In this document: piece by piece, positions 1,706-61,703 of the stretch
Layout: the number at the start of each line of letters is the position of its first letter
Position numbering within the stretch: position 1 is the first letter of the stretch
Origin: Heteronotia binoei
Lineage: Eukaryota
Assembly (NCBI RefSeq): GCF_032191835.1
Contig: NC_083233.1
Coordinates: 60,760,001-60,824,000, forward strand
Length of the DNA stretch: 64,000 nt
Direction: 5' to 3'
Position numbers and translations under genes: made by a program
The notes under the pieces: model-generated
The model's database searches: none
Told to the model about the DNA's origin: nothing
Seen by the model: only the letters and a program-made list of their open reading frames with translations

Positions 1706-1865
1706 NNNNNNNNNNNNNNNNNNNNNNNNNNNNNNNNNNNNNNNNNNNNNNNNNNNNNNNNNNNNNNNNNNNNNNNNNNNNNNNNNNNNNNNNNNNNNNN
1801 NNNNNNNNNNNNNNNNNNNNNNNNNNNNNNNNNNNNNNNNNNNNNNNNNNNNNNNNNNNNNNNNN
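1706..1865. other. Assembly gap (160 N)
   Basis: Run of N. Confidence 1.
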
Positions 1866-41626: not shown

Positions 41627-42210
41627 ATGGTCTGGGCTCTTCTTCTCCTCTTGTTGGTCACTTCTTCTTCAGGTGGGAAGGGGGCAACAACACTTTTATT
41701 AAAAATGCATATTTAATATGGAAATGTTAAATACTTATCCCCCCCCCCCCAATGAGTGGTCAGGATCTTGTTTTCAATGACTATACACTGTGACGGACTA
41801 CTGTCATTTAATACACCTTCTGGGGCACATTTAATGCTGTATAAAACATTGCATAAGTTGGTGCCAGAAGAACCCATTAATTGAAATCTGTCTTACAGGT
41901 GCAAATTCACAGCCTATCCTGACTCAGCCACCTTCAGCATCAGTCTCCCTCGGGAATTCAATAAGGCTTTCCTGCACTTTGAGCAGCGAGCACAGTAACT
42001 ATTATGTTGGGTGGTATCAACAGAGAGCACAAGAGGCTCCACGTTTCGTATGGTATGGTGACAGCACCCGGGGAGCCGGGATCCCGGATCGATTCACCGG
42101 CTCCAAGTCTGGTGGCACTCGCTATTTGACCATCACTGGCATCAAGGTTGAAGATGAAGCTGATTATTACTGTGGTGCAGACTATAGGATTGGTGGTGTC
42201 TACGGTTACT
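41627..42210 (+). CDS. IGLV: Ig lambda V segment F (IGLV4/9-like), open; leader 41627-41672, V exon 41899-42210
   Basis: MVWALLLLLLVTSSS|G; QPILTQPPS...LSCTLSSEHSNYYVGWYQQ...RYLTI...[11 protein letters not shown]. Confidence 0.95.
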
Positions 42211-42249
42211 CACAGTGACACATTTACAAGAGGAACTGAGACAAAAACC
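42211..42249 (+). other. Canonical 23-RSS of V-F
   Basis: CACAGTG, 23 nt, ACAAAAACC. Confidence 0.95.
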
Positions 42250-44045: not shown

Positions 44046-44958
44046 GACTCGGTTGATCTTCACATGTTGGAAGTGTTAAACAGATGGCAGCCTATCACCC
44101 AACCTGTTTGGTTCATGCTGAACAGTTGTGAATGTCTACCAAACAGGTTTGCATTCGGTTTTTGCAAGAGTGTGCAAAGACATTGCTGATGCAGACCAAT
44201 CTGCAATCTTCAGTACCAAGAGGGACAAAGTGGATGAATATTGAATTGTAAGGGCTTATTAAAACACAACATTTATTCATTGCTGATTTATATGATTTGT
44301 GACTGATTTGATTACTTAAGGAGCAGTCTGTTGAGTGGAGCATTTGCACAGAAATGCTGGAGGTATAGTTGGACTCAATTGGGCTGCCTGACAATGTACA
44401 TATTTGTACATGTAGGAAAATCCAGTTACACTGTACTGCATGGTTAGGAGCAGTCAGTAATAGGTTGAAGAATGGTTGAAATGATAATAGAAAAATGATA
44501 AGAGAAAAATCATGACCCTGTTTATGACAGGTGGGGAGGACACAAGGTGAGCAGGCCAGTGTCTGAGCATCCTGACCCTGGAGGGAGTTTCATTTTATTA
44601 GACCACACCCATGTGATTACTATTTCCCGATATCTGACCAAGCCACAAAGTACAATTTTCTCTGTGAGCAGAAGGTATTATTTTTCCTGCAGTCCTCTGA
44701 CTCTGAAAGCCCTTGGATCATAACTCCTGGTTCAAACACACACTTAAAAAAAGACATGTCTACCTTTGCTATGCCGAGTTACTCCATCCTTGTACTAAGT
44801 GGGAATATATTTAATTTTTTTCTTCGAACGGGATGAAATAAATGCTCAGCAATATTGCTTGATGGAAAGAAATGCCACCGTTTAAACAGTTTTACCCTTC
44901 TGAAACAAAAAAGGGGAGGACCTTTCGGGAGCTCTTGCAACCAATGAGCAAGCAAAGA

Positions 44959-44966
44959 ATTTGCAT
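44959..44966 (+). promoter_or_regulatory. Ig octamer of the V-G promoter
   Basis: ATTTGCAT ~115 bp upstream of the ATG. Confidence 0.9.
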
Positions 44967-45074
44967 AGAAGGCAGATCAATCCTGAATCATCTTAAGATC
45001 AGTTTAAGAAAGAGAGGATGTTTATCAGAGCTTCATTTCTAAAGGAAGCCCAAGTGCTCTCCACACTTCCTATC

Positions 45075-45510
45075 ATGCTGTGGGCCATTCTCCTTCCATA
45101 TCTCTCTCACTGCTCAGGTGTGTGGAAAAGACTTTCTTTCTACAGCTTTAAAATGCAATTCCAGGCCTGTTATTAACACCTATCTTTATATCTGCAGATG
45201 TCAGCTCTCAGCCTACCCTGACCCAACTCCCATCAGTGTCTGTGACTCCTGGAAAGGAAGTGAGACTCTCTGCCCATCTGAGCAGTGGATATGAGAGCTA
45301 TATTGTGGCATGGTATCAGCAGAGAGAGGGGCAGGCACCTCGGCCTCTGCTGTACTATGACAGCACCAGAGCCAGCGGGATCCCCGATCGATTCTCTGGT
45401 TCCAAATCAGGCCTAGATCGCTATCTGACCATCACTGGAGTGCAGCCAGAAGATGAGGCGACATATTACTGTAGTTGTAATCATGGCGATGACAGGAATT
45501 ATGTGTAACC
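45075..45510 (+). CDS. IGLV: Ig lambda V segment G, open, Cys23->Ala, YYCSC; leader 45075-45117, V exon 45198-45510
   Basis: [14 protein letters not shown]|D; ...[21 protein letters not shown]...[19 protein letters not shown]; TAA (45506-45508) lies 2 nt before the heptamer. Confidence 0.92.
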
Positions 45511-45549
45511 CACAGTGATGCATTTAGAAGAGGAACTGAGACAAAAAAA
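45511..45549 (+). other. 23-RSS of V-G with a slipped nonamer
   Basis: CACAGTG, 23 nt, ACAAAAAAA(CCC). Confidence 0.88.
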
Positions 45550-47029
45550 CCCTGCTAAGGGACAGGAAGGAGGCGTTTGCTGCCTCAGTCCTCTCTCCTG
45601 TCATTACGTATTTGTGTACTTTGATCAAGATCTCAGAATATAGGCTTGCATCTGTATGCTACAGAAAAAAAATACTATAGGAAGGATTTCCCTGTACTTC
45701 TAGGTTTTTTTTTTAAATGAACACTAATTTTGGACTGACAAATATCTAATTGAAAAGTTCTCAGATATCATATTGCAACCTGGAAATGGCCCAAAAAAAC
45801 AACCTAGGGAAACCATCTGTAGTGCACATATGCACTCGCACGCAAACACACACAGAATGACATGCATTCAGATTTGCACCTTGAATGACCTATACATCTA
45901 TAACAAATATTGTAAATTCTTTCCTGACGTGGTCAATGCTTTGTTCAACTGCCAGTCTGTATGACTGAAATGCTTCATGCACTTTGTGCTGCCGGCTCTT
46001 CCGCCTTGGGCCAGCAGGGGGAAATGTTGGTTTACCTTCTTCACATTTGCTAGAACGAATGAATTTCAAGGAGCCTTCCCCCAGTCTCCACCTGCACAAC
46101 AGGAAATAGTTCAGTGAGAGTAGATTCTCTTTGGGGGTCTTTCCTGCTCGCTCAGGCACAGAGACTGAAACTCAGTCAGTCTTAGGCAAGTTTGTACCTG
46201 ATCAAACTTTGCTTGCAACCTAACTAGACCTGACTATCACCAAAGGGATAGTGTAACTGCTAGTTCTTGATGGCAACTGATGACTAAATGTGCAGCTGGA
46301 TCCAGTTGGGGCCCGGAATGCTGAAGAGGAGAAGGAGGAGTTCCTGCCTTCTCGCCCGTGTTGTTCTGGTCAGCTGAAACACCACAGGAGCCATGGGGAG
46401 AGCAGTGCTCCTGAGGCTGATCCTGAGCATTTTTTCAGGTTACAGGATCCAAGCGGAGGGACAGCCATGACAGCTGATGTGAAGAAGGGGGATGAAATGG
46501 CCCCCTCCCTTAAGCAGAGCTGCAGCTGCCAAAGAGGAAGGGTATGATGTTTCAAGGCTTTGCTGCTTCCAACTTCAGCCCACAACCGGGGATCCATGCA
46601 GCTATTCCTCCACACGGTGACCATGAGACTGAGCTTTCCAGGAGTTGTAGCAATGCAAAACAACACAGGAAAATGACAAACCCAACACTGAGTGGTAAGA
46701 TAAGCGCCCAGTCATATGATGTGGAGACAGAATTCTCCTCAACGAATCATAACCAGCTGAGTGCTTCCTCTATGGCTAATATACACTCATTTGTTAGTAG
46801 CCTTCGTGGGCAGAAAGGTGAGATAATCATTTTGTGAAATAAATTGTTGTAGCCCTTTCGAAGTCATCTTCTTCAGCACACATCACCTTGTGTTACATCT
46901 TCCCCATGCAGCAAAGCAGAGAGTCTAAAACTGACACATGCCAATCTTTTGCTCTCCCCAGCCATTTCTCTTCTGGAAGACGAACAGGCAATGCTGGATG
47001 CAGTTGACTAGAGACCTCTCTTGAGCTCC

Positions 47030-47480
47030 CAGGTCCTTGGCTTAAAAGCAGAATAATTCCTGCTCTACAGAGGAGTGTGGTTTATTGAGTTAATGTGCAA
47101 GAGTTGCATCCTCATGGTTCTTTCATGCTGACGGATACCCATAGTTTGCATGTACTCAGTATTCAGACATGATGCTAAAATGGAAAGGATTGTATTAGGA
47201 GAGGCGTCGTTAAATTTGTATTCGGTATGCTCAAGCTCCAGATTCCTTGGCTTAAACTGATAATAATTTGGTGGCCACAAAGTCTGTTCTGTTGAGGAGA
47301 GTGGCTTTCTTATGAGAGTTCGCATGGTTATTTCACACTGATAGACATCATTGACATGGACCAAGTATTCAGACATAACACTCAAGCGGAAAGGATTGCA
47401 TTGAGTAAAGACGTCACTCCATTTGTGTTCTGTGTGCTTGAAAGTACGAGTATTGGGATATGATAATGCTGACCTTCAAG
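47030..47480. repeat. Diverged ~206-bp tandem repeat, ~2.2 copies
   Basis: AGTATTCAGACAT at 47158 and 47364; TCCTTGGCTTAAA near 47035 and 47243. Confidence 0.65.
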
Positions 47481-47869
47481 TCCAGTGGCAAGAATTACAG
47501 GACGTTGACTGGCTCAAGTCATCTGTCCCAACCATAGAAAGGCTCCTCTTCTCCCTCCTTCCTGGCCAGGCAGACCTTAGGAGTGAAAGAATACTGCTAT
47601 AATTTTCTTTGCAAGATGTTCCTCTAATATTATTGTCCCACTAATATTATTGTAAGGACAGAATGAAGCCAGTCTCCAAGCCCAGGATTGCAAATTGCAT
47701 TGGGGGTGGTGGTGTAAAGTATTAAAGTATTTGAAAACCCTTGTAAGATACCAACCCCAACATTGTGCCGAGTGGAATACATTTAATTCTTCTCAAACCC
47801 TGTCTTGTTTTCTGGAACAAAAAGGAGAGGGCCTTCCAGCAGGTTTTGTAACCAATGAGCAAGCAGTGA

Positions 47870-47877
47870 ATTTGCAT
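47870..47877 (+). promoter_or_regulatory. Ig octamer of the V-H promoter
   Basis: ATTTGCAT ~105 bp upstream of the ATG. Confidence 0.9.
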
Positions 47878-47977
47878 AAAGATTGGATCGGAAGTCCTGG
47901 ATCAGCTTAAGAAAGAGAGGACACTAAGCAGATCGACATTTCTACAGGGAACCCAAGTGCCCTTGATGTTTCCCATC

Positions 47978-48413
47978 ATGCTGTGGGCCATTCTTATTCC
48001 ACTCCTCTTTCACTGCTCAGGTGTGTGGAGAAGACTTTCTTTCTACACCTTTAAAATGCAATTCCAGGCCAGTTATTAACACCTATCATTCTATCTGCAG
48101 GTGTCCACTCTCAGCCTACCCTGACCCAGCTCCCCTCAGAGTCTGTGGCTCTTGGAAAGACAGTGAGACTCTCTGCCCGTCTGAGCAGTGGGTATGAGCG
48201 CTATGTTGTGGAGTGGTATCAGCAGAGAGAGGGGCAGGCACCCCAGCTTCTGCTGTACAGTGACAGCAGCAGAGCCAGTGGAATCTCTGATCGATTCTCT
48301 GGTTCCAAATCAGGCCTAGATCGCTATTTGACGATCACTGGGGTGCAGCCAGAAGATGAGGCGACGTATTACTGTGGCTGTTATCATGGCAGTGGCAGTA
48401 GCTCTGTGTAACC
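47978..48413 (+). CDS. IGLV: Ig lambda V segment H, open, Cys23->Ala, YYCGC; leader 47978-48020, V exon 48101-48413
   Basis: MLWAILIPLLFHCS|G; ...VRLSARLSSGYERYVVEWYQQ...[19 protein letters not shown]; TAA at 48409-48411. Confidence 0.92.
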
Positions 48414-48452
48414 CACAGTGATAGATTTAGAAGGGGAACTGAGACAAAAACC
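48414..48452 (+). other. Canonical 23-RSS of V-H
   Basis: CACAGTG, 23 nt, ACAAAAACC. Confidence 0.95.
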
Positions 48453-48678
48453 TCTGCTAAGGGAAGGCAGAAAAGCTTTCACTTTCTCACTCCTCTCTCT
48501 TCATTCATCACCTACTTTCAGAGCCTTCCCCTGGGTTAACTGAGGACAGTTTCAGTGCAATCCTTTGCATGTGTTCTCAGACACCAATTCCATCGAGTTC
48601 AAAAGACCTTATACTTAGGATTTTGGCCTTGGAGAGGCAAGGAACTCGCAGATGAAATTCTGTAAGCTTGAAAACATG

Positions 48679-48983
48679 GAAAAGGAAAGGTCCCCTGTGC
48701 AAGCACCAGTCGTTTCCGACTCTGGGGTGACGTTGCTTTCACAACGTTTTCACGGCAGACTTTTTTTTTTACAAGGTGGTTTGCCATTGCCTTTCCCAGT
48801 CTTTTACACTTTTCCCCCAGCAAGCTGGGTACTCATTTTACCGACATCGGAAGGATGGAAGGCTGAGTCAACCTTGGGCCAGCTACCTGAATCCAGCTTC
48901 CGCCGGAATCGAACTCAGGTCGTGAGCAGAGAGTTCAGACCACAGTACTGCTGCTTTACCACTCTGCACCACAGGGCCGCTTC
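48679..48983 (-). mobile_element. Sauria SINE, full length
   Basis: tRNA-like head and ACCTTT-type tail; 15-bp TSD AAGCTTGAAAACATG (48664-48678 and 48984-48998). Confidence 0.9.
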
Positions 48984-50370
48984 AAGCTTGAAAACATGAA
49001 CTTAAGTCAATTTGAACCAGAGACATGACACAATTTGAACCAGAGGCATGACACAAGAGTGTAAAGAATTAGATTTGATAGAGAGATCACCAAACCTCTC
49101 TTCAGTATGTTTGAAAATATGAGCATTGGGATATTATAATGCTTAAAATACAACAGCAAGCATTACAGGATCAAGTCACCCAACAATGTGGGGGCAGCAG
49201 CTGCAGGAAGGGCAGTATTTAAATCTGCATAGCTAGACAGATCTCTGGTGGCTAACCAGAAATCCCACTGGGTAAGGGCCTTGAATGGCCACACCCACTT
49301 TCAGAAAAATACTTGATAGGTACCAGGAAAGGTGTTGCTGGGCACCGAGTTGGGGACCCCTCACAACTAGTGTTCCCTCTAAGCTGAGTTAGCGTGAGCT
49401 AGCTCACAGATTTTTAGCCTCCAGCTCACACATTTTTGTCTTTGCGCAGGAAGGATGGCCCCAGAGCAAACTAATTTATACAGTAGCTCACAAATTTAAT
49501 GCCAGTAGCTCACAAAGTAGAAGTTTTGCTCATAAGACTGCAGCTTAGAGGGAACATTGCCCACAACCTGAAAAGGTTTCTCTTCTTCCTCCTCCACAGC
49601 CAGGAAGAGCTCAAGGAGAAAAGAGAATTGCTGTAATAAAGTGGGTTCAATGCAAGGAGGAGACATGGTTGCAGTGATCATAGCTCTCTTTATTAATTAC
49701 AGCATGGTAGCTACTGAACTAGAAGACTGCTTTACTGGGTCAATGGGGCCAACTATATACAGTTCAAGGTTCCTGTGCCAGCATGGTATTGGGCCATTTG
49801 AACTGTGATTGGACCACGGAAGCAGGGATTTGGATCCCTGATGGCTATTGTTCCCAGTCCCCAAGCTCAGTCCTCAAGACTCTGATGAGCCAGACAGGAG
49901 TGAAACATGAAGTCCCATATTTAGTCCATATATACAACAATTGCCACAATTTCCTTTGCAAAATGGACCAGAATTCTGCCTCCGCTCTTTTCCTTTCAGC
50001 ATTCTATCAGAGGGAGAACTGACCCTTCTGGCACAAATATGCCATTCTGATATTAACAGATGGAGGGAATAAACTCTATCTCCAAGCAGATGATTGCAGA
50101 TTGCATTGGGTAGTAATGTCTTTGAAAGCTTTTGGAACAGACTTCCATATCTTCCTGTACATATACACCCATTTCTGTGATTATCCCCCCCCCCCATCTG
50201 TTTTCTAAATGGAAGAACATTTAAATATTCTTTTTAGGAAATGTGATGATGTAAATGCTCTCCGGTATTGCTTGATAGGAAAAAATCCAGTTCTTTTGAT
50301 AGCCTTGCAATTCTGGAACAGAAAGGGGAGGGCCTTCCAGCAGCATTTGTAAGCTACGCACAAGCAAAGG

Positions 50371-50378
50371 ATTTGCAT
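50371..50378 (+). promoter_or_regulatory. Ig octamer of the pseudo-V-I promoter
   Basis: ATTTGCAT ~120 bp upstream of the ATG. Confidence 0.85.
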
Positions 50379-50493
50379 AGGGGGCAGATCTTAAGGGGAT
50401 CATCTTAAGAAAGGAAGAAGGAAGGAAAGAGAGGACAGACTAACCAGAGCTACTTTTCCACAGGAAGTCCAAGTGCTCTTGATGTCCCTCACC

Positions 50494-50952
50494 ATGCTGC
50501 GGACCATTCTCCTTCCACTTCTCTCTCACTGCTCAGGTGAGCAGAGAAGAGCTTCATCCTATAGCTTTAAAATCTAAAAGCCAGGACTATTATTAACACC
50601 TATCTATTTCTGCAGGTGTTAGCTCTCAGCCTACCCTGACCCAGCTCTCCTCAATATCTTGAAAGGAAGTGAAACTCTCTGCCTGTCTGAGCAGTGGGTA
50701 TAAGAGCTATGTTGTGGCATAGTATCAGCTGAGAGAGGGGCAGGCGCCTCGGCTCCTGCTATTAAATGACAGCACCGGACAAACTGCGACTCCAGATCGA
50801 TTCTCTGGTTCCATATCAGGCCTAGATAGCTATTTGACCATCACTGGGGTGCAGCCAGACGAAGAGGTGACATATTACTGTGGTTCAGCTCATGGCAGTG
50901 TCTTTACTAGCGTTGTGTAACCACAGTGAGAAGGGAAACTGTGACAAAAACC
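50494..50952 (+). pseudogene. IGLV: Ig lambda V pseudogene I (Ala23 family); leader 50494-50536, V exon 50616-50921, defective RSS 50922-50952
   Basis: In-frame TGA 50660-50662 and TAG 50720-50722 (Trp41), an FR1 deletion, and an RSS spacer of only 15 nt. Confidence 0.93.
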
Positions 50953-51026
50953 TCTGCTGAGAGAAAGAAGGAAAATGTTTGCTGACTAACTGAGAACAAC
51001 TGCAATTGAACGCTGTGCATCAGAAG

Positions 51027-51555
51027 TAGGGTTGCCAAGTCCAATAAAAGAAATATCTGAGGACTTTGGGGGTGGAGCCAGGAGACTTTGGGGTGGAGCC
51101 AGGAGACATTAGGGGTGGAACCAAGATCAAGGCTGTGACAAGCATAATTGAACTCCAAAGGGCTCTGGCCATCACATTTAAAGGGACAGCACATCTTTTC
51201 AATTCCTTCCTTCCATAGGAAATAATGAAGGATAGGGACACCTTCTTTTGGGGCTCATAGAATTGGACCCCCTGGTCCAATCGTTTTGAAACTTGGGGGG
51301 TATGTTGGGGAGAGACACTAGATGCTATACTGAAAATTTGGTGCCTCTATCCCAAAAAACAGGGGCCCCCCAGAGCCCCAGATACCCGCAGATCAATTCT
51401 CCATGATTTTCTATGGGAATAAATCTCCATACGGAATAATAGAGTTCCCAGCAGACATTTCCCTCCCCTCCCCCTGCTTTCTGATGACCCTGAAGCGGGG
51501 GGAGGGTCTCCAAACCGGGGGATCCCCTGACCCCACCTGGGGATTGGCAACCCTA
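51027..51555. mobile_element. 529-bp non-autonomous hAT element (TAGGGTTGCCAA family; many shorter relatives in the window)
   Basis: TIR TAGGGTTGCCAA/TTGGCAACCCTA; perfect 8-bp TSD ATCAGAAG. Confidence 0.92.
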
Positions 51556-53297
51556 ATCAGAAGCAACTCCCGTGGGGTTCACCGGGACTTAGTAAGACTG
51601 CACAGCATTGTGGCCCTGGTGTCATGAAAAGCGGTGGACGCTATGTCTAAGCTCCAATGATACTATGAGGCCTACTGCTGCTTCCATAGAATTTTGAAAT
51701 GCATCCACAGGGTCTTGGAGCTATATTGTGGCTGCTAGTTGATGGTGGCAGTTTATGAATAAATGTGAATCTGGGCCAAGTCAAACTCTGGGCCACTGCA
51801 TAGGAGAAGGAGGAATTTCTGCCTTCTCTGCTGTGCTGCGTATGGCAACTGAAACACACCTTGAGGAGCCTTGAGGACAATGTTCCCTCTAAGCTGCAGT
51901 CTTGTGAGCAAAAATTCTACTTTGTGAGTTACTGGCATTAAAGGTGCGAGCTACTGCATAAATTATGGTGCTCTGGGGTCATCCTTCCTGAGCTAAGACA
52001 GAAATGCATGAGCTGGAAGCTAAAACTCTGTGAGCTAGCCCTTGCTAACTCAGCTTAGAGGGAACACTGCTTGAGGGGAGTGGGGGGAGAACTACTGAGG
52101 TTGCAGGATTGATGCAGAAGAGCGGCCATGTCAGTTGGTATTAGGGTAACCGATAGGGTGGCCATAATATCTGCAGGCCAGCCAGGGACACCTTGAGGGG
52201 GGAAGGAATGTGTGTGCGCGTGTGCAGAGCACACGCGCGCCGCCGGAAACAGGAAGTGACATCACTTCCTGTGACATCATTTCCCCCAAATGACATCATT
52301 TCCCCCAAATGCCACTGCCAGAAACAGGAAGTGACTTCACAGCACTTCCTGTGACGTCCCCAAAAATCCCCCAAATATCACTGCCGGAAACAATTTTGTT
52401 CTCAAATCCTGTATATACTTCATCAGTATATGGGATAAGGCACTTTCTCAACTGTGCTGCATAATGCAGCCTATTTATTTTGTCCTGTTTGCTCTGTTGG
52501 CTCTATCTGCGCCACCTTCATCACTTTCGGGGTGTGGATCCCCCAGTGGGGTGGTCTCCCGACTCCCTCCGCCGGCTGTTTCTGATAGCCCTGCGCCCCC
52601 TCTTTCATTTGATATGTGTCCCGTGCGGGTGCCACCTTCCCGCCGGGAGATGCCGCAAAATGAGCCCCCTTGAGGCTTATGGCGGCAGGGCTTGGGGGAA
52701 GCGAGCTAGACTGCTGTTCTTTTGAGGGGTTATAGAGTGTTTCGAGCCCGTCCCCGTGGCTTTTAAAAATGTTAAAAAGAGATGACACCATGAGGAAGAA
52801 CTAGGAAGTTGATTGTAATTTTTTTTTCAGAGAAGGTGAAATATACATAAGGTAATTCACATCTGTTATTCACTGCAGCATCTTGCACAAATTGATATTT
52901 TTCCAATACTTTGCAAGATGTGCCAGAATCTGCTCCCACCTTGCTATCAGCATTCCATGAGAGGGAGAACTGAGCATTCTTGCACAAATACTATCTTCTA
53001 ATATTATTGGAAGGAGGGAAGAAAGCCAGTCTCCAAGTATATCTGTGGGAACATGTTCGAATGTCTCCTTGTTTATATTCACACGCTGAAAAAAAAAAAG
53101 ACATTTCATTATTTGCTATGATGAACAGCTCCATCCCTGTGTTAAATGGGAATGCGTTAAAATAAGTGGGGTAAGAAAATGCTCTGCAATATTGTTTGAT
53201 GGAATGAAACCCAGTACTTTTTTTGATAGCTGCCCTCTTCCAGAGCAAAAAAGGGAGGGCTTCCCAGAAGCTTTGGTACCCAGTGAGCAAGCAATTC

Positions 53298-53305
53298 ATT
53301 TGCAT
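53298..53305 (+). promoter_or_regulatory. Ig octamer of the V-J promoter
   Basis: ATTTGCAT ~115 bp upstream of the ATG. Confidence 0.9.
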
Positions 53306-53417
53306 AGAGGGTGCATCTCAAGTCCTGGATCAGCTTAAGAAAGAAAGAAAGAAAGAGAGGATGCTAAACAGATTGACATTTCCACAGAGAATCAAAGCAC
53401 TCTCGACATTTCCCAGC

Positions 53418-53858
53418 ATGCTGTGGGCCATTCTCCTTCCACTTCTCTCTCATTGCTCAGGTGTGCAGAGATTTTTTTTTCTTACAGCTTTAAAATGCAT
53501 TTCCAGTCCTGTTATTAACACACTGGGCCCTGTTATTAACACATATCTTTCTATCTTTAGGTGTTAGCTCTCTCCCTGCAGTGACCCAGCCACCCTCAGA
53601 ATCTGTGGCTGTTGGAACGACAGTGAGGCTCTCTGCCCATATGAGCAGTGGGTATGACAACTATGGTACAGAGTGGTATCAGCAGAGAGATGGGCAGGCT
53701 CCTCGGCTTCTACTGTATGGTGACAGCAACAGAGCCAGTGGGATCCCAGATCGATTCTCTGGTTCCAAATCAGGCAGCAACCGCTATTTGACCATCACTG
53801 GGGTACAGCCGGAAGATGAGGCTACATATTACTTTGGTGTAGGTGATAACGAGTAAGC
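53418..53858 (+). CDS. IGLV: Ig lambda V segment J, open, both canonical cysteines absent (Ala23, Phe104); leader 53418-53460, V exon 53561-53858
   Basis: [14 protein letters not shown]|G; ...[21 protein letters not shown]...[14 protein letters not shown]; TAA at 53854-53856. Confidence 0.9.
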
Positions 53859-53897
53859 CACAGTGATACATCTGCAAGGGGAACTGAGACAAAAACC
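53859..53897 (+). other. Canonical 23-RSS of V-J
   Basis: CACAGTG, 23 nt, ACAAAAACC. Confidence 0.95.
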
Positions 53898-57137: not shown

Positions 57138-60100
57138 ATGGCGTACCCTGACCGAGGGGTGTCCAAAGCAGCCATGAGGCACTACTTGACAGAAAGTGCT
57201 CGAATAGCAATTGAAGCTATGGAACCAGAGGAGGGTGTGGTGGAAGTGAGTTCTGGAGGATAAATGAAAGCAGAAAATGGGATGTGTGTGGGGGGGGGGG
57301 GGGTGGGGGGAGATGTAGAAAGAAACTTTAATGGGAAGCATCTCCCAAATCCTGCCCTTGGGGCAACCAGCAATGCAAGTAGGAGCAAGGCACATCTTTA
57401 TGGTGGTGATGGGAAAACAGCCCAGTTCTCCAGTTATGGTGCAGAAATAGTAGGTGAAGCTTCCTCTGGGGCTATGTGCAAATCCTCTTCCAGCATTCTA
57501 TGTGGGTAGAATGAAATTACAAATACATGGAGGATCACTGCAGAAATTCTACCTAATGTGCTTGCATTAATTGTAATGCCAATATAGAGCCTGTTCATAA
57601 ACAGGAAACCTTTATTCACTGTTAAATCACTGTATGTTCCCTTGGTACTACATTATATGTTCAAAGGCCTCAAATATATACGATCACCTGCCTTGGGAAG
57701 AGATAGACAGATCATCTGTCTTGGGAAGAGTTAGACTATAAGCCCAGTTAAATAAAGCATTCATCTCCCTTCTTATATTTATGATGCTACAAGAAGGGGA
57801 AATAATCCTGGATACACTGCTGCTTGGGCGCACTGTGAACACATCAGATGCCTTACCTGGAGTCAGGCCATTAGTGTACAGGATCTCTGGCACAGAAAGG
57901 TATGGTTGCCATCCTCCTGGTGGGGCCTGGAGATCTCCTGCTTTTACAACTGATCTCCAGCTGGTAGAGATCAGCTCCCCACAGTGCCGGATTAAACCCT
58001 GTGGAGGTCCCTAGGCAGTCAAAAAAATTTCAGGCCCCTCACAAATAATCTCAGAATCTGAGAGTCCACCCCACCACCCATGCCCCCCACTGCAGCCTGC
58101 AGGCACCTTCTTAAAAGGCCCTTTTACTAAGCTGCAGAGGAGGGGCAGAGAGAGGCAAACTTGGCAACAATGCCAGCAGCAGCCGCACTAGGCAAGTCGG
58201 GCAAAGAGCAGCTTAGTTGCTGGCTGCATGTGTAGGCTGGGAGGGCTGCAAGCGGGGGGAGGAATGGGGGGGGGAGGGAAAGCCAGCCTGGGACCCCTAA
58301 AGGTGTGGGGGTCCATAGGCCAGTGCCTCCTTGGCCTAATTGTTAATCTGGCACTGACTACCCTGCAGAAAATGGCTGCTTTGAAGGGTGGACTCTATGG
58401 CACTGTTCCAGGTTGAGGCTCCTCCCCTCCCCAAACGCTGCCATCTCCTGGATCCACCCCCAAAGTCTCCAGGTATTTTCCAAGACAGACCTGGCAACCC
58501 TACAGAAAGGTCGTTCCCTATTATCAGAGATCCTTTAATGGAAAATGCCAAGGATGGAACCTTGAGCGTTCAGAACAAGGGCTGTCAGCTCCAGGCTGGG
58601 AAATTACTGAAGAGGGCAAGGTTTGGGAGGAGAGGAAAGGGACTTCAGCAGCATAAAATGCCATAGAGTGCACTCTCCAAAGCTGCCATTTTGTCAAGGA
58701 GAACTGAGCTAGGTAATCTGGAGATCAGTTGTCATTCCAGAAGATTTCCAGGCCCCACATGGAGACTGGCAACTCCATAAGAGCAGGTGATGTATCATGG
58801 AGCTACAGGGTCTCCCAATGGGACCGTATATCTGTTCACCCCAGAGAATCCAGAGCCTGACAGGAGTTCTGATGTGTGCTGTTTCTTTCCTAGCTGGGCC
58901 CTGGGAAGCAGATGCCAGCAGTGGGTCCCAACCAGCTCCTGGACATGCCTCTGTTCTGCAAGACCCCTTTCTTGCCAGGCTCCAACACCTTGTTCTACAC
59001 AACAAAAGTGGGAGAAAAGGTAAACTGTGAACAATATTCAAAAGCATCCCTTTGCCTTGTCTGTATCATGTTTTGATGGTGCTGTTTTGATGGTGCCTTC
59101 TTATGAGAACACAGAATTGTAAGAAAGGACTGTGGGGGTTAGCTAGAAGAAGAAGACCATAGATTTATACCCCGCCCAGTGGCTTACAATCTCCTTTATC
59201 TTCTTCCCCCACAACAGACACCCTGTGAAGTAGGTGGGGCTGAGAGAGCGCTCACAGAAGCTGCTCTTTCAAGGACAACTCTGTGAGAGCTATGGCTGAC
59301 CCAAGAGCATTCCAGCAGCTGCAAGTGGAGGAATGGGGGATCAAACCCGGTTCTCTGCACACTCAACCACTACACCAAATTGGTCTCTATATGGTAGACC
59401 CACTAATGCACTTAGGAAAACCTTGATATATTTGATAGAAGTTTCCATTCAAAATATTTGCAACCCATCCTTCCTTTTTATGGGTCCTACATTGCAGCTA
59501 ACAAATCCAAGTTTAAAAGGAAGCTAGGAGAAGCAACAACAAGAGAATGCAAAGCCAAATAGCAGGAGTGCCTCTATCCAGAGGAGTAAGCAATGAGAAG
59601 CACTAAAGGAGAAGCTATGGCAAACATTAAATGACATAGGCCCTGTGACTGTATATGGCATATCCTTAACAATAAGCCGAAAAGCTGAGAGAGAGACAGA
59701 GAAAGTTTGGAGATAATTTATTTATTTAATGGACTTATATCCCGCCCTTCTCACCGAAGTGTCTCAGGGCGGCTGTGTGTTGTGCGTAGGGCTGCCAGAC
59801 TCCAGATGGTATGTTGCAATAATACACATTCTGATGTATAGACAAAGTCTATAATGCACTGGAAAATAAATTTAACATATATTGTGCAAGAAATAAAATA
59901 CAATTCAGTATACAGTATCAGTTCTCTTGGAACGCCATGGCTGTTTTTTTAACACAACTCAATGTTCAGTCATCAAAATGTCCATCTCATGCAGTTCATA
60001 ATACAGTCAATTGTGCTAATATTCAAAATGTCCATGTTATGCAATTCATAATACAGTCAATTGTGCTAATATTTATATTTCTATAATATATTTATTTTCT

Positions 60101-61545
60101 GGAGCATTTTTTATTGTATATACTTAGCCTCCAGGTGGTAACTGGTGATCTGTTATCACAACTGATCTCCAGGCAACAGAGATAAGTTCAACTGGAGAAA
60201 ATGGCTGCTTTGGAAGGTGGACTCAGTGGCATGATTCCCCCTTGAAGTCCCTCTCCTCCCTCTGTCCCTCCTTCCTCAGGCTCCACCCAACCACCCCCCA
60301 AATCTCCAGATATTTCCCAACATAGATCTGGCAATGCTAGTTGGAGGCAGAAACTGATACGTGGCCCATCCCTTCTCTGGTGCTTCTTGGTTCTAAATTT
60401 CCTCATCTTGGAACAACTTGAAGCTCCTTAGGTGTTTGTTGGTAACATGCAATTAGCTGTTTATGTATTAAATAATAATGGTGTGATACCCAGGCAATGA
60501 CATGCCCAAATTACTTTTGAAAGTTAATACTCTGAAACCGGATCAAAGGGATGCAATCCTTTCAATGCTTCTTCTCGCCCACCACCAGCTTTATCACCCA
60601 TCTCCTACTTTTGACCTGAACGATCCGTATTGTAAAATCATGGCACCAAAATACAACAGTCTCCATGATCCACACTTGCGTGCCTTTTACAAGAGGAAAG
60701 ACAATCTACAGAGACTGAAAAAGTCCGGCTTTGTCACTGACAAAAACAAAGTAGGTGAAACCAAGGAAAGTTGGAAAAAGGGTGGTGGTTGTGACAGCAC
60801 AGGAAGGGTTTGGGGATGTTTTGACTCTTAGAGGAATCCATGAGAGGCAGGGACACTTTTCTCTCTTCCCCTCTTCCCCATAATCTTAGAATTTGTGTCT
60901 GAGCTCAAGAATGTTTTCCCTTGGCCCCTCAATAGCACAAATTTGCAACCAAATTCATAGAATACAAGTGCAGAGAAAAGTTTACCAACCCACCTGCTTA
61001 TACCCAAGCGTGCTAGCCAATTCCCATCTAAAAGTTGGCACGGGGGAGCATGTGTTAATGAAGCTTCTCTGCCTGGACCCCAAGATGGAAGCTGCAGGTG
61101 ATCAAGGCAAGGGTTATTCATTCATACAATGGCGTTTCTACCTTTTGTCGCCTAGGTTGTGTGCTCCCTGAAAGAATTCAATGAATACCGACAGTACTTG
61201 ACTTCCCTCAAGCTGGAGTTTGAAAAGCATTATTTACAAGAACAAGTAAGACTTACAGGAAGTAATAGGTGGGAGGTAGTTGGGTGCCCATCTTCTGAGA
61301 ATATTATTAATAAGTCTAATGATACTTGAACATGGATAGGCCCAACAACCCTATGGCAATTTATCAAGCCAACCCTTGAAATATCCATTTTGTTTCCCTT
61401 TTTAGAAAATGATTGAAAAACAAGTCACAAAGCTACAAGGGACTCCGCTTCTTCCTGAAGCTGCTGACACCTCCAAATACCGAGACTGGCTGCTGAAGGA
61501 AGAAAGACCAACAATAGAGGAACAAGAGAACGTGATGAGGAACCG
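57138..61545 (+). CDS. FSIP2: FSIP2-like (fibrous sheath-interacting protein 2) gene, 5' part; exons 57138-57245 (inferred first exon), 58894-59019, 60589-60750, 61156-61245, 61406-61545; continues beyond the window
   Basis: Phase-compatible GT/AG exons join to ...VGPNQLLDMPLFCKTPFLPGSNTLFYTTKVGEK|LYHPSPTFDLNDPYCKIMAPKYNSLHDPHLRAFYKRKDNLQRLKKSGFVTDKNK|VVCSLKEFNEYRQYLTSLKLEFEKHYLQEQ|KMIEKQ...WLLKEE...MRNR, collinear with the FSIP2 N-terminus as I recall it. Orthology is not established. Confidence 0.85.
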
Positions 61546-61703
61546 GTGTGGATTTCACATAGCTTCTTTGTCTTTCTCTCTGCTGTCTTTCCAATGATAA
61601 AATAGATCTTGCTTCCATCAACTTGGAATGTGAAAATCAAACATAAATTGCCCAGAAAGTTTCTTCCCAGAAGAAATGCCTCCCCTTTGCTTTCTGGTTT
61701 AAC

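What the first reader, a model, noticed from the sequence alone, without database searches (positions are those of the whole stretch)
45075..53897. A tandem IGLV family that has abandoned the canonical Cys23-Cys104 disulfide
Seen: all four members (G, H, pseudo-I, J) have GCC (Ala) at the Cys23 position (45272, 48175, 50681, 53635). This is a two-base change from TGC, so it arose once before the family expanded. G, H and J still keep open frames, Trp41, leaders, splice sites, perfect octamers and 23-RSSs. G and H differ at about 20 of 99 residues, concentrated in FR1 and the CDRs, while the DRFSG...YYC stretch of FR3 is identical, which is the pattern of selected V genes. Known: this disulfide is nearly invariant in rearranging V domains; exceptions are isolated (e.g. 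the ABPC48 myeloma VH) or in non-rearranging V-set proteins such as CD2 and CEACAM N domains. Annotation pipelines that require both Cys would discard these genes. Inference: a germline-encoded class of disulfide-free or alternatively bonded light chains.
Basis: partly seen in the sequence, partly recalled or inferred. Interest (0 to 1): 0.88.

Follow-up and report, generated by a model that had tools for sequence, protein, structure and literature searches.

The report
Gecko antibody light-chain genes without the core disulfide
A family of gecko lambda light-chain V genes has replaced the first cysteine of the nearly universal internal disulfide with alanine (one member has lost both cysteines), yet the genes are conserved, under protein-level selection and transcribed, so geckos probably make antibody light chains that fold without that bond.

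Summary
Four tandem IGLV genes (G, H, pseudo-I, J) carry GCC (Ala) at IMGT position 23. Five other IGLV genes in the window keep Cys.

- J has also lost Cys104 (TTT, Phe).
- G and H carry an extra Cys106.
- All four have an in-frame TAA two bases before the heptamer, which V-J joining must trim off.

The genes look functional, not decaying:
- **Orthologs:** GCC-23 genes are intact in Gekko kuhli and Paroedura picta, and Ala23 domains occur in Sphaerodactylus. J and H have syntenic orthologs; J's, in Paroedura, has Leu104.
- **Selection:** framework dN/dS is 0.15-0.33 in four ortholog pairs (pooled 0.24, P=2e-12), like the canonical neighbour F. Pseudogene I is relaxed (0.65-0.87).
- **RNA:** contigs show H's leader precisely spliced to its V exon with Ala23 intact, and a V-J joined transcript of this family in a related species.

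Anolis has a related gene with Thr23 (ACC). Anguimorphs and snakes keep TGC.

I found no paper describing this, and VgenExtractor discards such genes by design. Protein-level proof, heavy-chain pairing and J's expression are untested.

The parts
44959..45549 (+). IGLV gene G. Octamer 44959-44966, leader exon 45075-45117, intron 45118-45197, V exon 45198-45510. Ala23 GCC at 45272-45274, Cys104 TGT at 45470-45472, extra Cys106 TGT at 45476-45478, in-frame TAA at 45506-45508. 23-RSS 45511-45549 with nonamer ACAAAAAAA.
   Evidence: Pfam V-set 57 bits. Groups with G. kuhli gene L004:17839 (94/76). Framework dN/dS 0.33 against it.
47870..48452 (+). IGLV gene H. Octamer 47870-47877, leader exon 47978-48020, intron 48021-48100, V exon 48101-48413. 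Ala23 GCC at 48175-48177, Cys104 at 48373-48375, Cys106 at 48379-48381, TAA at 48409-48411. Perfect 23-RSS 48414-48452.
   Evidence: Syntenic ortholog K in G. kuhli, L001:10127-10432. Framework dN/dS 0.15, P=1.4e-4. RNA contigs in runs X1 and X2 join 48020 to 48101 and keep GCC.
50371..50952 (+). Pseudogene I. Octamer 50371, leader exon 50494-50536, V exon 50616-50921. GCC at 50681-50683 followed by TGT (Cys24). 9-bp FR1 deletion, TGA at 50660-50662, TAG replacing Trp41 at 50720-50722. Heptamer at 50922 with only a 15-nt spacer.
   Evidence: Framework dN/dS 0.65-0.87, not significant, against G, H, J and K. No RNA depth in four runs.
53298..53897 (+). IGLV gene J, with no cysteine in the V region. 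Octamer 53298-53305, leader exon 53418-53460, intron 53461-53560, V exon 53561-53858. Ala23 GCC at 53635-53637, Phe104 TTT at 53833-53835, TAA at 53854-53856. Perfect 23-RSS 53859-53897.
   Evidence: Last V before FSIP2, like Paroedura d3 (Ala23, Leu104 TTG). They are sisters at 100/98. Framework dN/dS 0.15, P=1e-5; CDR1/2 0.07. AF2 model pLDDT 87.7, best matches lambda V domains. No RNA holder found.
41627..42249 (+). IGLV gene F, the nearest canonical neighbour, used as control. TGC Cys23, TGT Cys104, no stop before the heptamer at 42211.
   Evidence: Orthologs in G. kuhli and Paroedura. Framework dN/dS 0.22-0.34. dS against the Ala family is saturated.
58863..61585 (+). FSIP2 exons (58863-59042, 60557-60829, 61027-61307, 61334-61585). 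They mark the end of the V cluster just after J.
   Evidence: 85-93% identity to the FSIP2 gene called in Paroedura locus L003.

Best explanation
G, H and J are working, rearranging lambda V genes of an old gecko-wide IGLV subfamily. Its founder changed Cys23 (TGC) to Ala (GCC).

How it most likely works:
1. Each gene is transcribed from an octamer promoter and its leader intron is spliced out.
2. It joins a J-lambda segment through its 23-RSS.
3. Joining trims off the TAA that sits 2 nt before the heptamer.
4. The product is a lambda chain whose V domain folds as a normal V-set sandwich with no B-F strand disulfide.

In G and H, Cys104 is left as an unpaired thiol, probably buried. In the J lineage Cys104 was also replaced, by Phe or Leu, which together with Ala23 would fill the core.

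Shown: the gene anatomy, the cross-species conservation, the protein-level selection, H's splicing, and one V-J joint in this family. Inferred: secretion, heavy-chain pairing, and folding stability without the bond.
For: **The change is old and shared**
- GCC at codon 23 in all 4 window genes and in 5 intact genes of Gekko kuhli and Paroedura picta. Ala23 domains also occur in Sphaerodactylus townsendi.
- Synteny pairs H with K and J with Paroedura d3. The tree pairs J with d3 at 100/98, H with K, and G with Gk_836d2.

**Selection acts on the protein**
- Framework dN/dS: H-K 0.15, J-d3 0.15, G-836d2 0.33, Pp_d2-836d1 0.31. Pooled 0.24, P=2e-12.
- This equals the Cys-bearing control F (0.22-0.34).
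- Paralog pairs G/H/J give 0.29-0.32, so constraint continued after the cysteine was lost.
- The one real pseudogene, I, gives 0.65-0.87, not significant.

**Regulatory parts are kept**
- Octamers, splice sites, heptamers and nonamers are retained in orthologs, while flanks are only 74-80% identical.

**RNA**
- Contigs in two RNA runs join 48020 to 48101 exactly and keep GCC.
- One contig matches 48244-48409 with no mismatch, then diverges at the V end.
- In a related species, high-depth contigs keep GCC, and one reads ...GSSYV then WIFG, a V-J joint with the TAA removed.

**Fold**
- Pfam V-set 55-59 bits. The AF2 model of the cysteine-free J has pLDDT 87.7 and TM 0.85-0.89 to lambda V domains.
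Against: - No protein-level data exist for these chains.
- Spliced leader-V RNA can come from sterile germline transcripts.
- The clear V-J joint comes from another species and from a run whose RNA status is a guess. It lies on the G-like part, which does not cover codon 23. In the window's own species the only sign of joining is a contig that stops matching at the V end.
- No RNA holder was found for J.
- No J-C cluster is in the window. FSIP2 follows J directly, so how these V genes reach a J segment is unknown.
- AlphaFold says nothing about stability without the disulfide.
- dN/dS rests on about 100 codons per gene.
Confidence: 0.75

Rival explanations
1. The genes are non-functional 'ORF' V genes. 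They are transcribed and perhaps rearranged, but they are never used in secreted antibody, because the domain misfolds and B cells carrying them are counter-selected. Their similarity would reflect recent duplication or gene conversion.
For: Missing 1st-CYS is the classic reason to class a V gene as ORF. An in-frame TAA sits before each heptamer. One of the four copies is already dead. No protein data exist and J has no RNA holder.
Against: Four ortholog pairs across genera show framework dN/dS of 0.15-0.33 at dS of 0.25-0.34. That equals the canonical control, while pseudogene I is relaxed. RSS, octamer and splice sites are conserved against 74-80% flank identity. The TAA is a subfamily trait also present in the Cys23-bearing Elgaria gene, and it is trimmed in the observed V-J joint.
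Confidence: 0.12
2. The genes serve mainly as sequence donors for gene conversion into Cys-bearing lambda genes, as chicken pseudo-V genes do. They would not be light chains in their own right.
For: They are tandem, closely related V copies. The extra Cys106 is shared by G and H but not by their orthologs, which hints at exchange between paralogs.
Against: Donor pseudo-V genes need no leader, promoter, splice sites or RSS, yet all are conserved here. H is transcribed and spliced with Ala23. No Cys-bearing member of this subfamily exists in the window or in the gecko loci to receive the tracts.
Confidence: 0.03
3. At least the J lineage has left the ordinary repertoire for a fixed, germline-encoded role. 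It could be an invariant or innate-like light chain, or a partner of particular gecko heavy chains.
For: Between the window and Paroedura, J's CDR1 and CDR2 are as conserved as its frameworks (dN/dS 0.07). In the other pairs CDR dN/dS is 0.8-1.4. Both cysteines are gone in both species. J holds a fixed position as the last V before FSIP2. Geckos have extra IgM genes reported to lack the H-L disulfide (bioRxiv 10.64898/2026.02.13.705754).
Against: It keeps a perfect 23-RSS like an ordinary V gene. The CDR estimate rests on 10 codons. No transcript was found. The link to the IgM genes is only a co-occurrence.
Confidence: 0.1

Closest known systems
Neighbouring canonical IGLV gene F and its relatives in tuatara, turtles and mammals (P0003, P0004, P0006; the RYLTI / ...DHGSGSSFV type, which I recall as resembling human IGLV9/IGLV4, not tested here)
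   Same: Same gene layout, leader, FR2/FR3 motifs (WYQQR, GIPDRF.GS.SG..RYLTI, EDEA.YYC), CDR3 germline motif and 23-RSS.
   Different: These all keep TGC/TGT Cys23 and Cys104. dS between F and the Ala family is saturated, so the split is old.
Anolis lambda V gene with Thr23 (A. carolinensis XP_062814715.1 / UniRef H9G6N0; A. sagrei P0100, P0104)
   Same: Same squamate subfamily. Cys23 is lost, Cys104 is kept, a TAA lies before the heptamer, and NCBI models it as a V-J-C light chain.
   Different: The codon is ACC (Thr), not GCC (Ala), and residue 22 is also Thr. It is a single copy among 19 V genes in the 100-kb locus. Whether the loss is shared with geckos or independent is unresolved.
Same subfamily in anguimorphs and snakes (Elgaria P0107, Varanus P0005, Candoia P0109, Liasis P0110)
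   Same: Closest framework relatives outside geckos and anoles. In the Elgaria gene at L005:22946 the frame also ends in a stop where the V exon ends.
   Different: They keep TGC Cys23.
Mouse myeloma antibody ABPC48 VH, and engineered disulfide-free scFv and intrabodies
   Same: These are V domains that fold and bind without the canonical disulfide (PMC5734687).
   Different: They are single somatic or engineered cases, mostly in VH. They are not a germline-encoded, multi-gene family conserved across species.
Non-rearranging V-set domains without the disulfide (for example CD2 domain 1; from my own knowledge, not tested)
   Same: A V-type sandwich that is stable without the B-F disulfide.
   Different: They have no RSS and no rearrangement and are not antigen receptors. 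The genes here keep 23-RSS and show a V-J joint.

Membership tests
Rearranging immunoglobulin lambda V gene (IGLV) | Split leader: leader exon, short intron, V exon with GT..AG | tested here: met
   For H, RNA contigs use exactly these splice sites.
Rearranging immunoglobulin lambda V gene (IGLV) | Octamer promoter element upstream of the ATG | tested here: met
   ATTTGCAT at 44959, 47870, 50371 and 53298, which is 108-123 nt before each ATG.
Rearranging immunoglobulin lambda V gene (IGLV) | RSS with heptamer, 23-nt spacer and nonamer abutting the V exon | tested here: met
   H and J are perfect. G's nonamer matches 7 of 9. I fails, with a 15-nt spacer.
Rearranging immunoglobulin lambda V gene (IGLV) | V-set fold | tested here: met
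   Pfam PF07686 at 55-59 bits against a cut-off of 26. The AF2 model of J has pLDDT 87.7 and TM 0.85-0.89 to solved lambda V domains.
Rearranging immunoglobulin lambda V gene (IGLV) | 1st-CYS at IMGT 23 | tested here: not met
   GCC (Ala) in G, H, I and J.
Rearranging immunoglobulin lambda V gene (IGLV) | CONSERVED-TRP 41 and a hydrophobic residue at 89 | tested here: met
   WYQQ and RYLTI are present in G, H and J. I has TAG in place of Trp41.
Rearranging immunoglobulin lambda V gene (IGLV) | 2nd-CYS at IMGT 104 | tested here: inconclusive
   Met in G and H (TGT). Not met in J (TTT, Phe) or in its Paroedura ortholog (TTG, Leu).
Rearranging immunoglobulin lambda V gene (IGLV) | Found joined to J (and C) in transcripts | tested here: inconclusive
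   A V-J joint (..GSSYV then WIFG) was seen in a related species. In the near-identical run X1 a contig stops matching at the V end. Spliced leader-V RNA was seen for H. No full V-J-C read and nothing for J.
V pseudogene | Internal stop, frameshift, or defective splice site or RSS | tested here: not met
   G, H and J have none, apart from the trimmable TAA at the coding end that the whole subfamily shares. I meets this test.
Gene-conversion donor pseudo-V (chicken type) | Lacks leader, promoter and RSS | tested here: not met
   All three are present and conserved in orthologs.
Surrogate light chain VpreB | V-like gene with no RSS and a unique non-Ig tail | tested here: not met
   A 23-RSS directly follows the V exon and there is no tail. 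VpreB appears only as one of many fold matches (rank 28).

The most novel reading that the evidence does not exclude
Geckos maintain a germline-encoded class of light chains whose V domain has no intradomain disulfide. One lineage, J and its Paroedura ortholog, is wholly cysteine-free and has conserved CDRs, and serves a fixed, specialised role. That role could be an invariant light chain or a dedicated partner for the gecko-specific IgM isotypes that lack the H-L disulfide. The loss of Cys23 in Anolis would be either shared or convergent within the same subfamily, which would point to a framework unusually able to do without the bond.
Probability: 0.15. Interest if true: 0.9.

Novelty: new variant of a known kind. 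Interest (0 to 1): 0.78.

Why it matters
The Cys23-Cys104 disulfide is treated as a defining feature of antigen-receptor V domains. It is written into annotation rules, and VgenExtractor requires both cysteines.

**For immunology.** A multi-gene V subfamily that lost the bond, stayed under protein-level selection across gecko genera and is transcribed would show that vertebrate antibodies can do without it naturally. Current reptile V-gene catalogues would then be missing part of the repertoire.

**For protein engineering.** These are natural frameworks that may fold without a disulfide. One has the core pair Ala23/Phe104. Such frameworks are what intrabody and cytoplasmic antibody work has tried to build.

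**For evolution.** The parallel in Anolis (Thr23), with Cys kept in snakes and anguimorphs, gives a comparative system for asking which framework residues make the bond dispensable.

Tried and rejected
- **Protein search with a 49-residue FR1-FR2 query of H**, meant to catch short transcript-derived fragments: no candidates.
- **RNA run search for J:** no RNA holder. J's expression stays open.
- **J-lambda or C-lambda in the window:** none.
- **One loss of Cys23 or two (geckos, Anolis):** the 96-column tree is unresolved. It needs at least 2 state changes, and the AU test does not reject a single no-Cys clade (p = 0.23). I leave this open.
- **A compensating cysteine elsewhere in FR1 or CDR1:** none. 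The only other cysteines are in the cleaved leader and at position 106 of G and H. Their orthologs lack Cys106, so it cannot be the family's solution.
- **Assembly or sequencing error:** rejected. The same codon occurs in four paralogs, three other assemblies and RNA contigs.
- **The pre-heptamer TAA as a sign of decay:** rejected. It is shared by the Anolis gene and by one Cys23-bearing Elgaria gene (L005:22946).
- **Literature:** six searches found no description of Cys23-less squamate IGLV genes. The library lacks many subscription papers, for example the 2010 Anolis light-chain study, so prior mention cannot be excluded.
- **Not run:** The search of protein representatives (its 50% identity clusters would merge all lambda V genes) and complex prediction (no binding claim is made).


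Full report
**1. What is in the sequence**

The region holds four tandem lambda V gene units on the + strand. Each has:
- an exact ATTTGCAT octamer (44959, 47870, 50371, 53298);
- a 43-nt leader exon (ATG at 45075, 47978, 50494, 53418);
- a short GT..AG intron (80, 80, 79 and 100 nt);
- a V exon.

In all four, the codon 13 codons upstream of Trp41 (IMGT position 23) is GCC, at 45272, 48175, 50681 and 53635. The five other IGLV genes in the window keep Cys23. The closest neighbour, F (41627-42249), uses TGC.

G, H and J are open and carry CACAGTG, a 23-nt spacer and a nonamer. The nonamer is perfect in H and J, and ACAAAAAAA in G.

I is a true pseudogene. It has a 9-bp FR1 deletion, a TGA at 50660, TAG in place of Trp41 at 50720, and a 15-nt RSS spacer.

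- J has also lost Cys104 (TTT, Phe, at 53833), so its V region has no cysteine.
- G and H carry an extra Cys106 (YYCSC, YYCGC).
- All four end ...TAA NN | CACAGTG. The TAA is in frame and must be removed by coding-end trimming.

Pfam scores G, H and J as V-set at 55-59 bits, the same as F.

**2. Relatives elsewhere**

*Geckos.* The best database hit to G is a Gekko kuhli protein with RLSARLSGGY, that is, Ala23. I fetched four loci: two from G. kuhli (L001, L004), one from Paroedura picta (L003) and one from Anolis carolinensis (L002). They show:
- Three intact Ala23 genes in G. kuhli and two in Paroedura, all with GCC at codon 23, octamers, RSS and the pre-heptamer TAA.
- Two Ala23 domains in a Sphaerodactylus townsendi protein model.

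*Synteny.*
- The G. kuhli gene K is flanked by sequence matching window 45717-47622 and 48453-48668, so it is the positional ortholog of H.
- In Paroedura the order is E, F, d2, d3, FSIP2. In the window it is E, F, G, H, I, J, FSIP2 (FSIP2 exons at 58863-61585). So J and d3 are both the last V gene before FSIP2.
- Paroedura d3 has Ala23 and Leu104 (TTG). The cysteine-free state is therefore shared, and position 104 has moved on (Phe in one species, Leu in the other).

*Tree.* A maximum-likelihood tree groups all ten gecko Ala23 domains (91/88). It pairs J with d3 (100/98), H with K (95/76), and G with the second G. kuhli gene of model P0102 (94/76). The family had therefore already split into at least these lineages before the genera diverged.

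*Outside geckos.*
- Anolis carolinensis has one gene of the same subfamily with Thr23 (ACC), among 19 V genes in 100 kb. NCBI models it as a V-J-C 'immunoglobulin lambda-1 light chain-like' protein.
- A. sagrei has two such domains.
- Elgaria, Varanus, Candoia and Liasis members of the subfamily keep Cys23; the codon, read in the Elgaria and Candoia DNA, is TGC.
- With column 23 removed, the tree does not resolve these groups. At least two state changes are needed, and a single no-Cys clade is not rejected (p-AU 0.23). GCC and ACC are one step apart and share possible intermediates from TGC. One loss or two remains open.

**3. Are they under selection?**

I used Nei-Gojobori counts on the V exons.

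| Comparison | Framework dN/dS | P |
|---|---|---|
| H vs K (ortholog) | 0.15 | 1.4e-4 |
| J vs Paroedura d3 (ortholog) | 0.15 | 1e-5 |
| G vs Gk_836d2 (ortholog) | 0.33 | 0.005 |
| Pp_d2 vs Gk_836d1 (ortholog) | 0.31 | 0.002 |
| Four ortholog pairs pooled | 0.24 | 2e-12 |
| F orthologs (canonical control) | 0.22-0.34 | |
| Paralogs G-H, G-J, H-J | 0.29-0.32 | <0.01 |
| Pseudogene I vs the others | 0.65-0.87 | not significant |

- dS in the ortholog pairs is 0.25-0.34.
- All paralogs already carry Ala23, so the constraint between them acted after the cysteine was lost.
- CDR dN/dS is about 0.8-2 in most pairs, the usual V-gene pattern.
- In J vs d3, CDR1/2 are also conserved (0.07), but this rests on only 10 codons.
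- Flanking DNA between species is 74-80% identical, and the paralogs' flanks barely align. Exons, intron, promoter and RSS are kept.

**4. Expression**

A run search with H found RNA runs holding up to 0.49 of its sampled words. A run search with J found none on record as RNA. I laid contigs of four runs on window 45050-51049.

- In RNA runs X1 and X2, contigs of 203 nt and 175 nt cross a joint that skips 48021-48100 (GT..AG). This is the predicted leader intron of H. They run on through codon 23 with no change there. X1 differs at 48179, which gives R24H.
- A further X1 contig matches 48244-48409 with no mismatch. Its last 8 letters do not align. It leaves the germline sequence at the T of the TAA, as a V-J joint would.
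- In run X4 (another species, 94-97% identical, depth 105-211 in a 77-Mb run, RNA status a guess), contigs over 48098-48251 keep GCC.
- One X4 contig, lying on the G V exon (45363-45486), continues TAGTGGCAGTAGCTATGTG TGGATTTTCGG. That reads ...GSSYV followed by WIFG, a J-lambda start, with the TAA removed.
- No run shows depth in the intron, in the flanks or over pseudogene I.

Caveats:
- Spliced leader-V RNA alone could be a sterile germline transcript.
- The clean V-J joint is from a different species and does not span codon 23.
- No single read links Ala23 to J-C.

**5. Structure**

AlphaFold2, run with the family alignment, gives a confident V-type sandwich for the cysteine-free J exon (mean pLDDT 87.7). 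It does the same for the Anolis Thr23 V-J domain (84.3). The best solved matches for J are lambda V domains (TM 0.85-0.89). This confirms the fold class only. It says nothing about stability without the bond.

**6. Interpretation**

The most likely reading, at about 0.75, is a functional, rearranging V-lambda subfamily that has done without the canonical disulfide since before the gekkonid genera sampled here diverged. If the Sphaerodactylus models are right, the loss predates the Gekkonidae-Sphaerodactylidae split. I recall that split as roughly 100 million years old, and did not test the date here.

- In most members Cys104 remains as a lone thiol, presumably buried.
- In the J lineage the pair became Ala23/Phe104 or Ala23/Leu104, a small-plus-large pair that could fill the core.

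Rivals:
- ORF genes that are transcribed but never used (0.12).
- Gene-conversion donors (0.03).
- A specialised fixed role for J (0.10). This rival overlaps with the main reading.

**7. Comparison with what is known, and novelty**

IMGT lists C23, W41, hydrophobic 89 and C104 as the conserved V-domain positions (PMC7555362). Known exceptions:
- the ABPC48 VH and evolved or engineered disulfide-free scFv (PMC5734687);
- non-rearranging V-set proteins (my own knowledge).

VgenExtractor, the tool used for the reptile V-gene surveys, requires both cysteines (bioRxiv 10.1101/002618). It would therefore have skipped these genes.

Six literature searches found no description of Cys23-less squamate IGLV genes, though the library is incomplete. 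I rate this as a new variant of a known kind. They are ordinary IGLV genes in every tested respect except the defining disulfide. They are conserved as a family and have a parallel in anoles.

Noticed in passing
window 53561-53590: In J, the V exon contains CTCCCTGCAG|TGACCCAG, 21 nt inside the exon. This could act as an alternative in-frame splice acceptor that removes seven residues (GVSSLPA) at the leader/FR1 boundary. My first automatic parse picked it by mistake.
   Followed up: no
window 48690-48980; also 49369-49560 and 51877-52069: A tRNA-derived SINE-like element lies between H and I. It attracts very high RNA contig depth in all the runs laid (tens of thousands). A second repeat is present in inverted copies between H-I and I-J. 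Both also occur elsewhere in the window and in the G. kuhli locus.
   Followed up: partly
window 58863-61585: FSIP2 exons (85-93% identical to Paroedura) begin a few kb after the last V gene, on the same strand. No J-C cluster lies downstream of the V genes here, unlike the Anolis locus. The gecko V cluster must reach J-C by inversion or across FSIP2.
   Followed up: partly
In the Candoia aspera locus, a Metallophos_2 (VPS29-type) gene also sits just upstream of the lambda V genes, so the neighbourhood may be conserved in squamates.
   Followed up: no
window 45476-45478 and 48379-48381: G and H both have TGT (Cys) at IMGT 106. Their G. kuhli orthologs have Val or Leu there. This suggests parallel change, or gene conversion between the two paralogs in this species.
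   Followed up: no
L001 7849 / window 44581-45716: The 1.1-kb unit holding gene G has no counterpart at the syntenic place in G. kuhli. There, the gene that groups with G lies about 17 kb further on, after other V genes. The locus order has been reshuffled between the two geckos.
   Followed up: partly
L002 17835 (Anolis carolinensis): The Anolis Thr23 gene has heptamer CACAATG and nonamer ACAAAATCT, both one or two bases off consensus, yet NCBI models it as a V-J-C light chain. Its residue 22 is also Thr (RLTT).
   Followed up: no
window 1706-1865: A run of 160 N (assembly gap or masked). I left it untouched.
   Followed up: no
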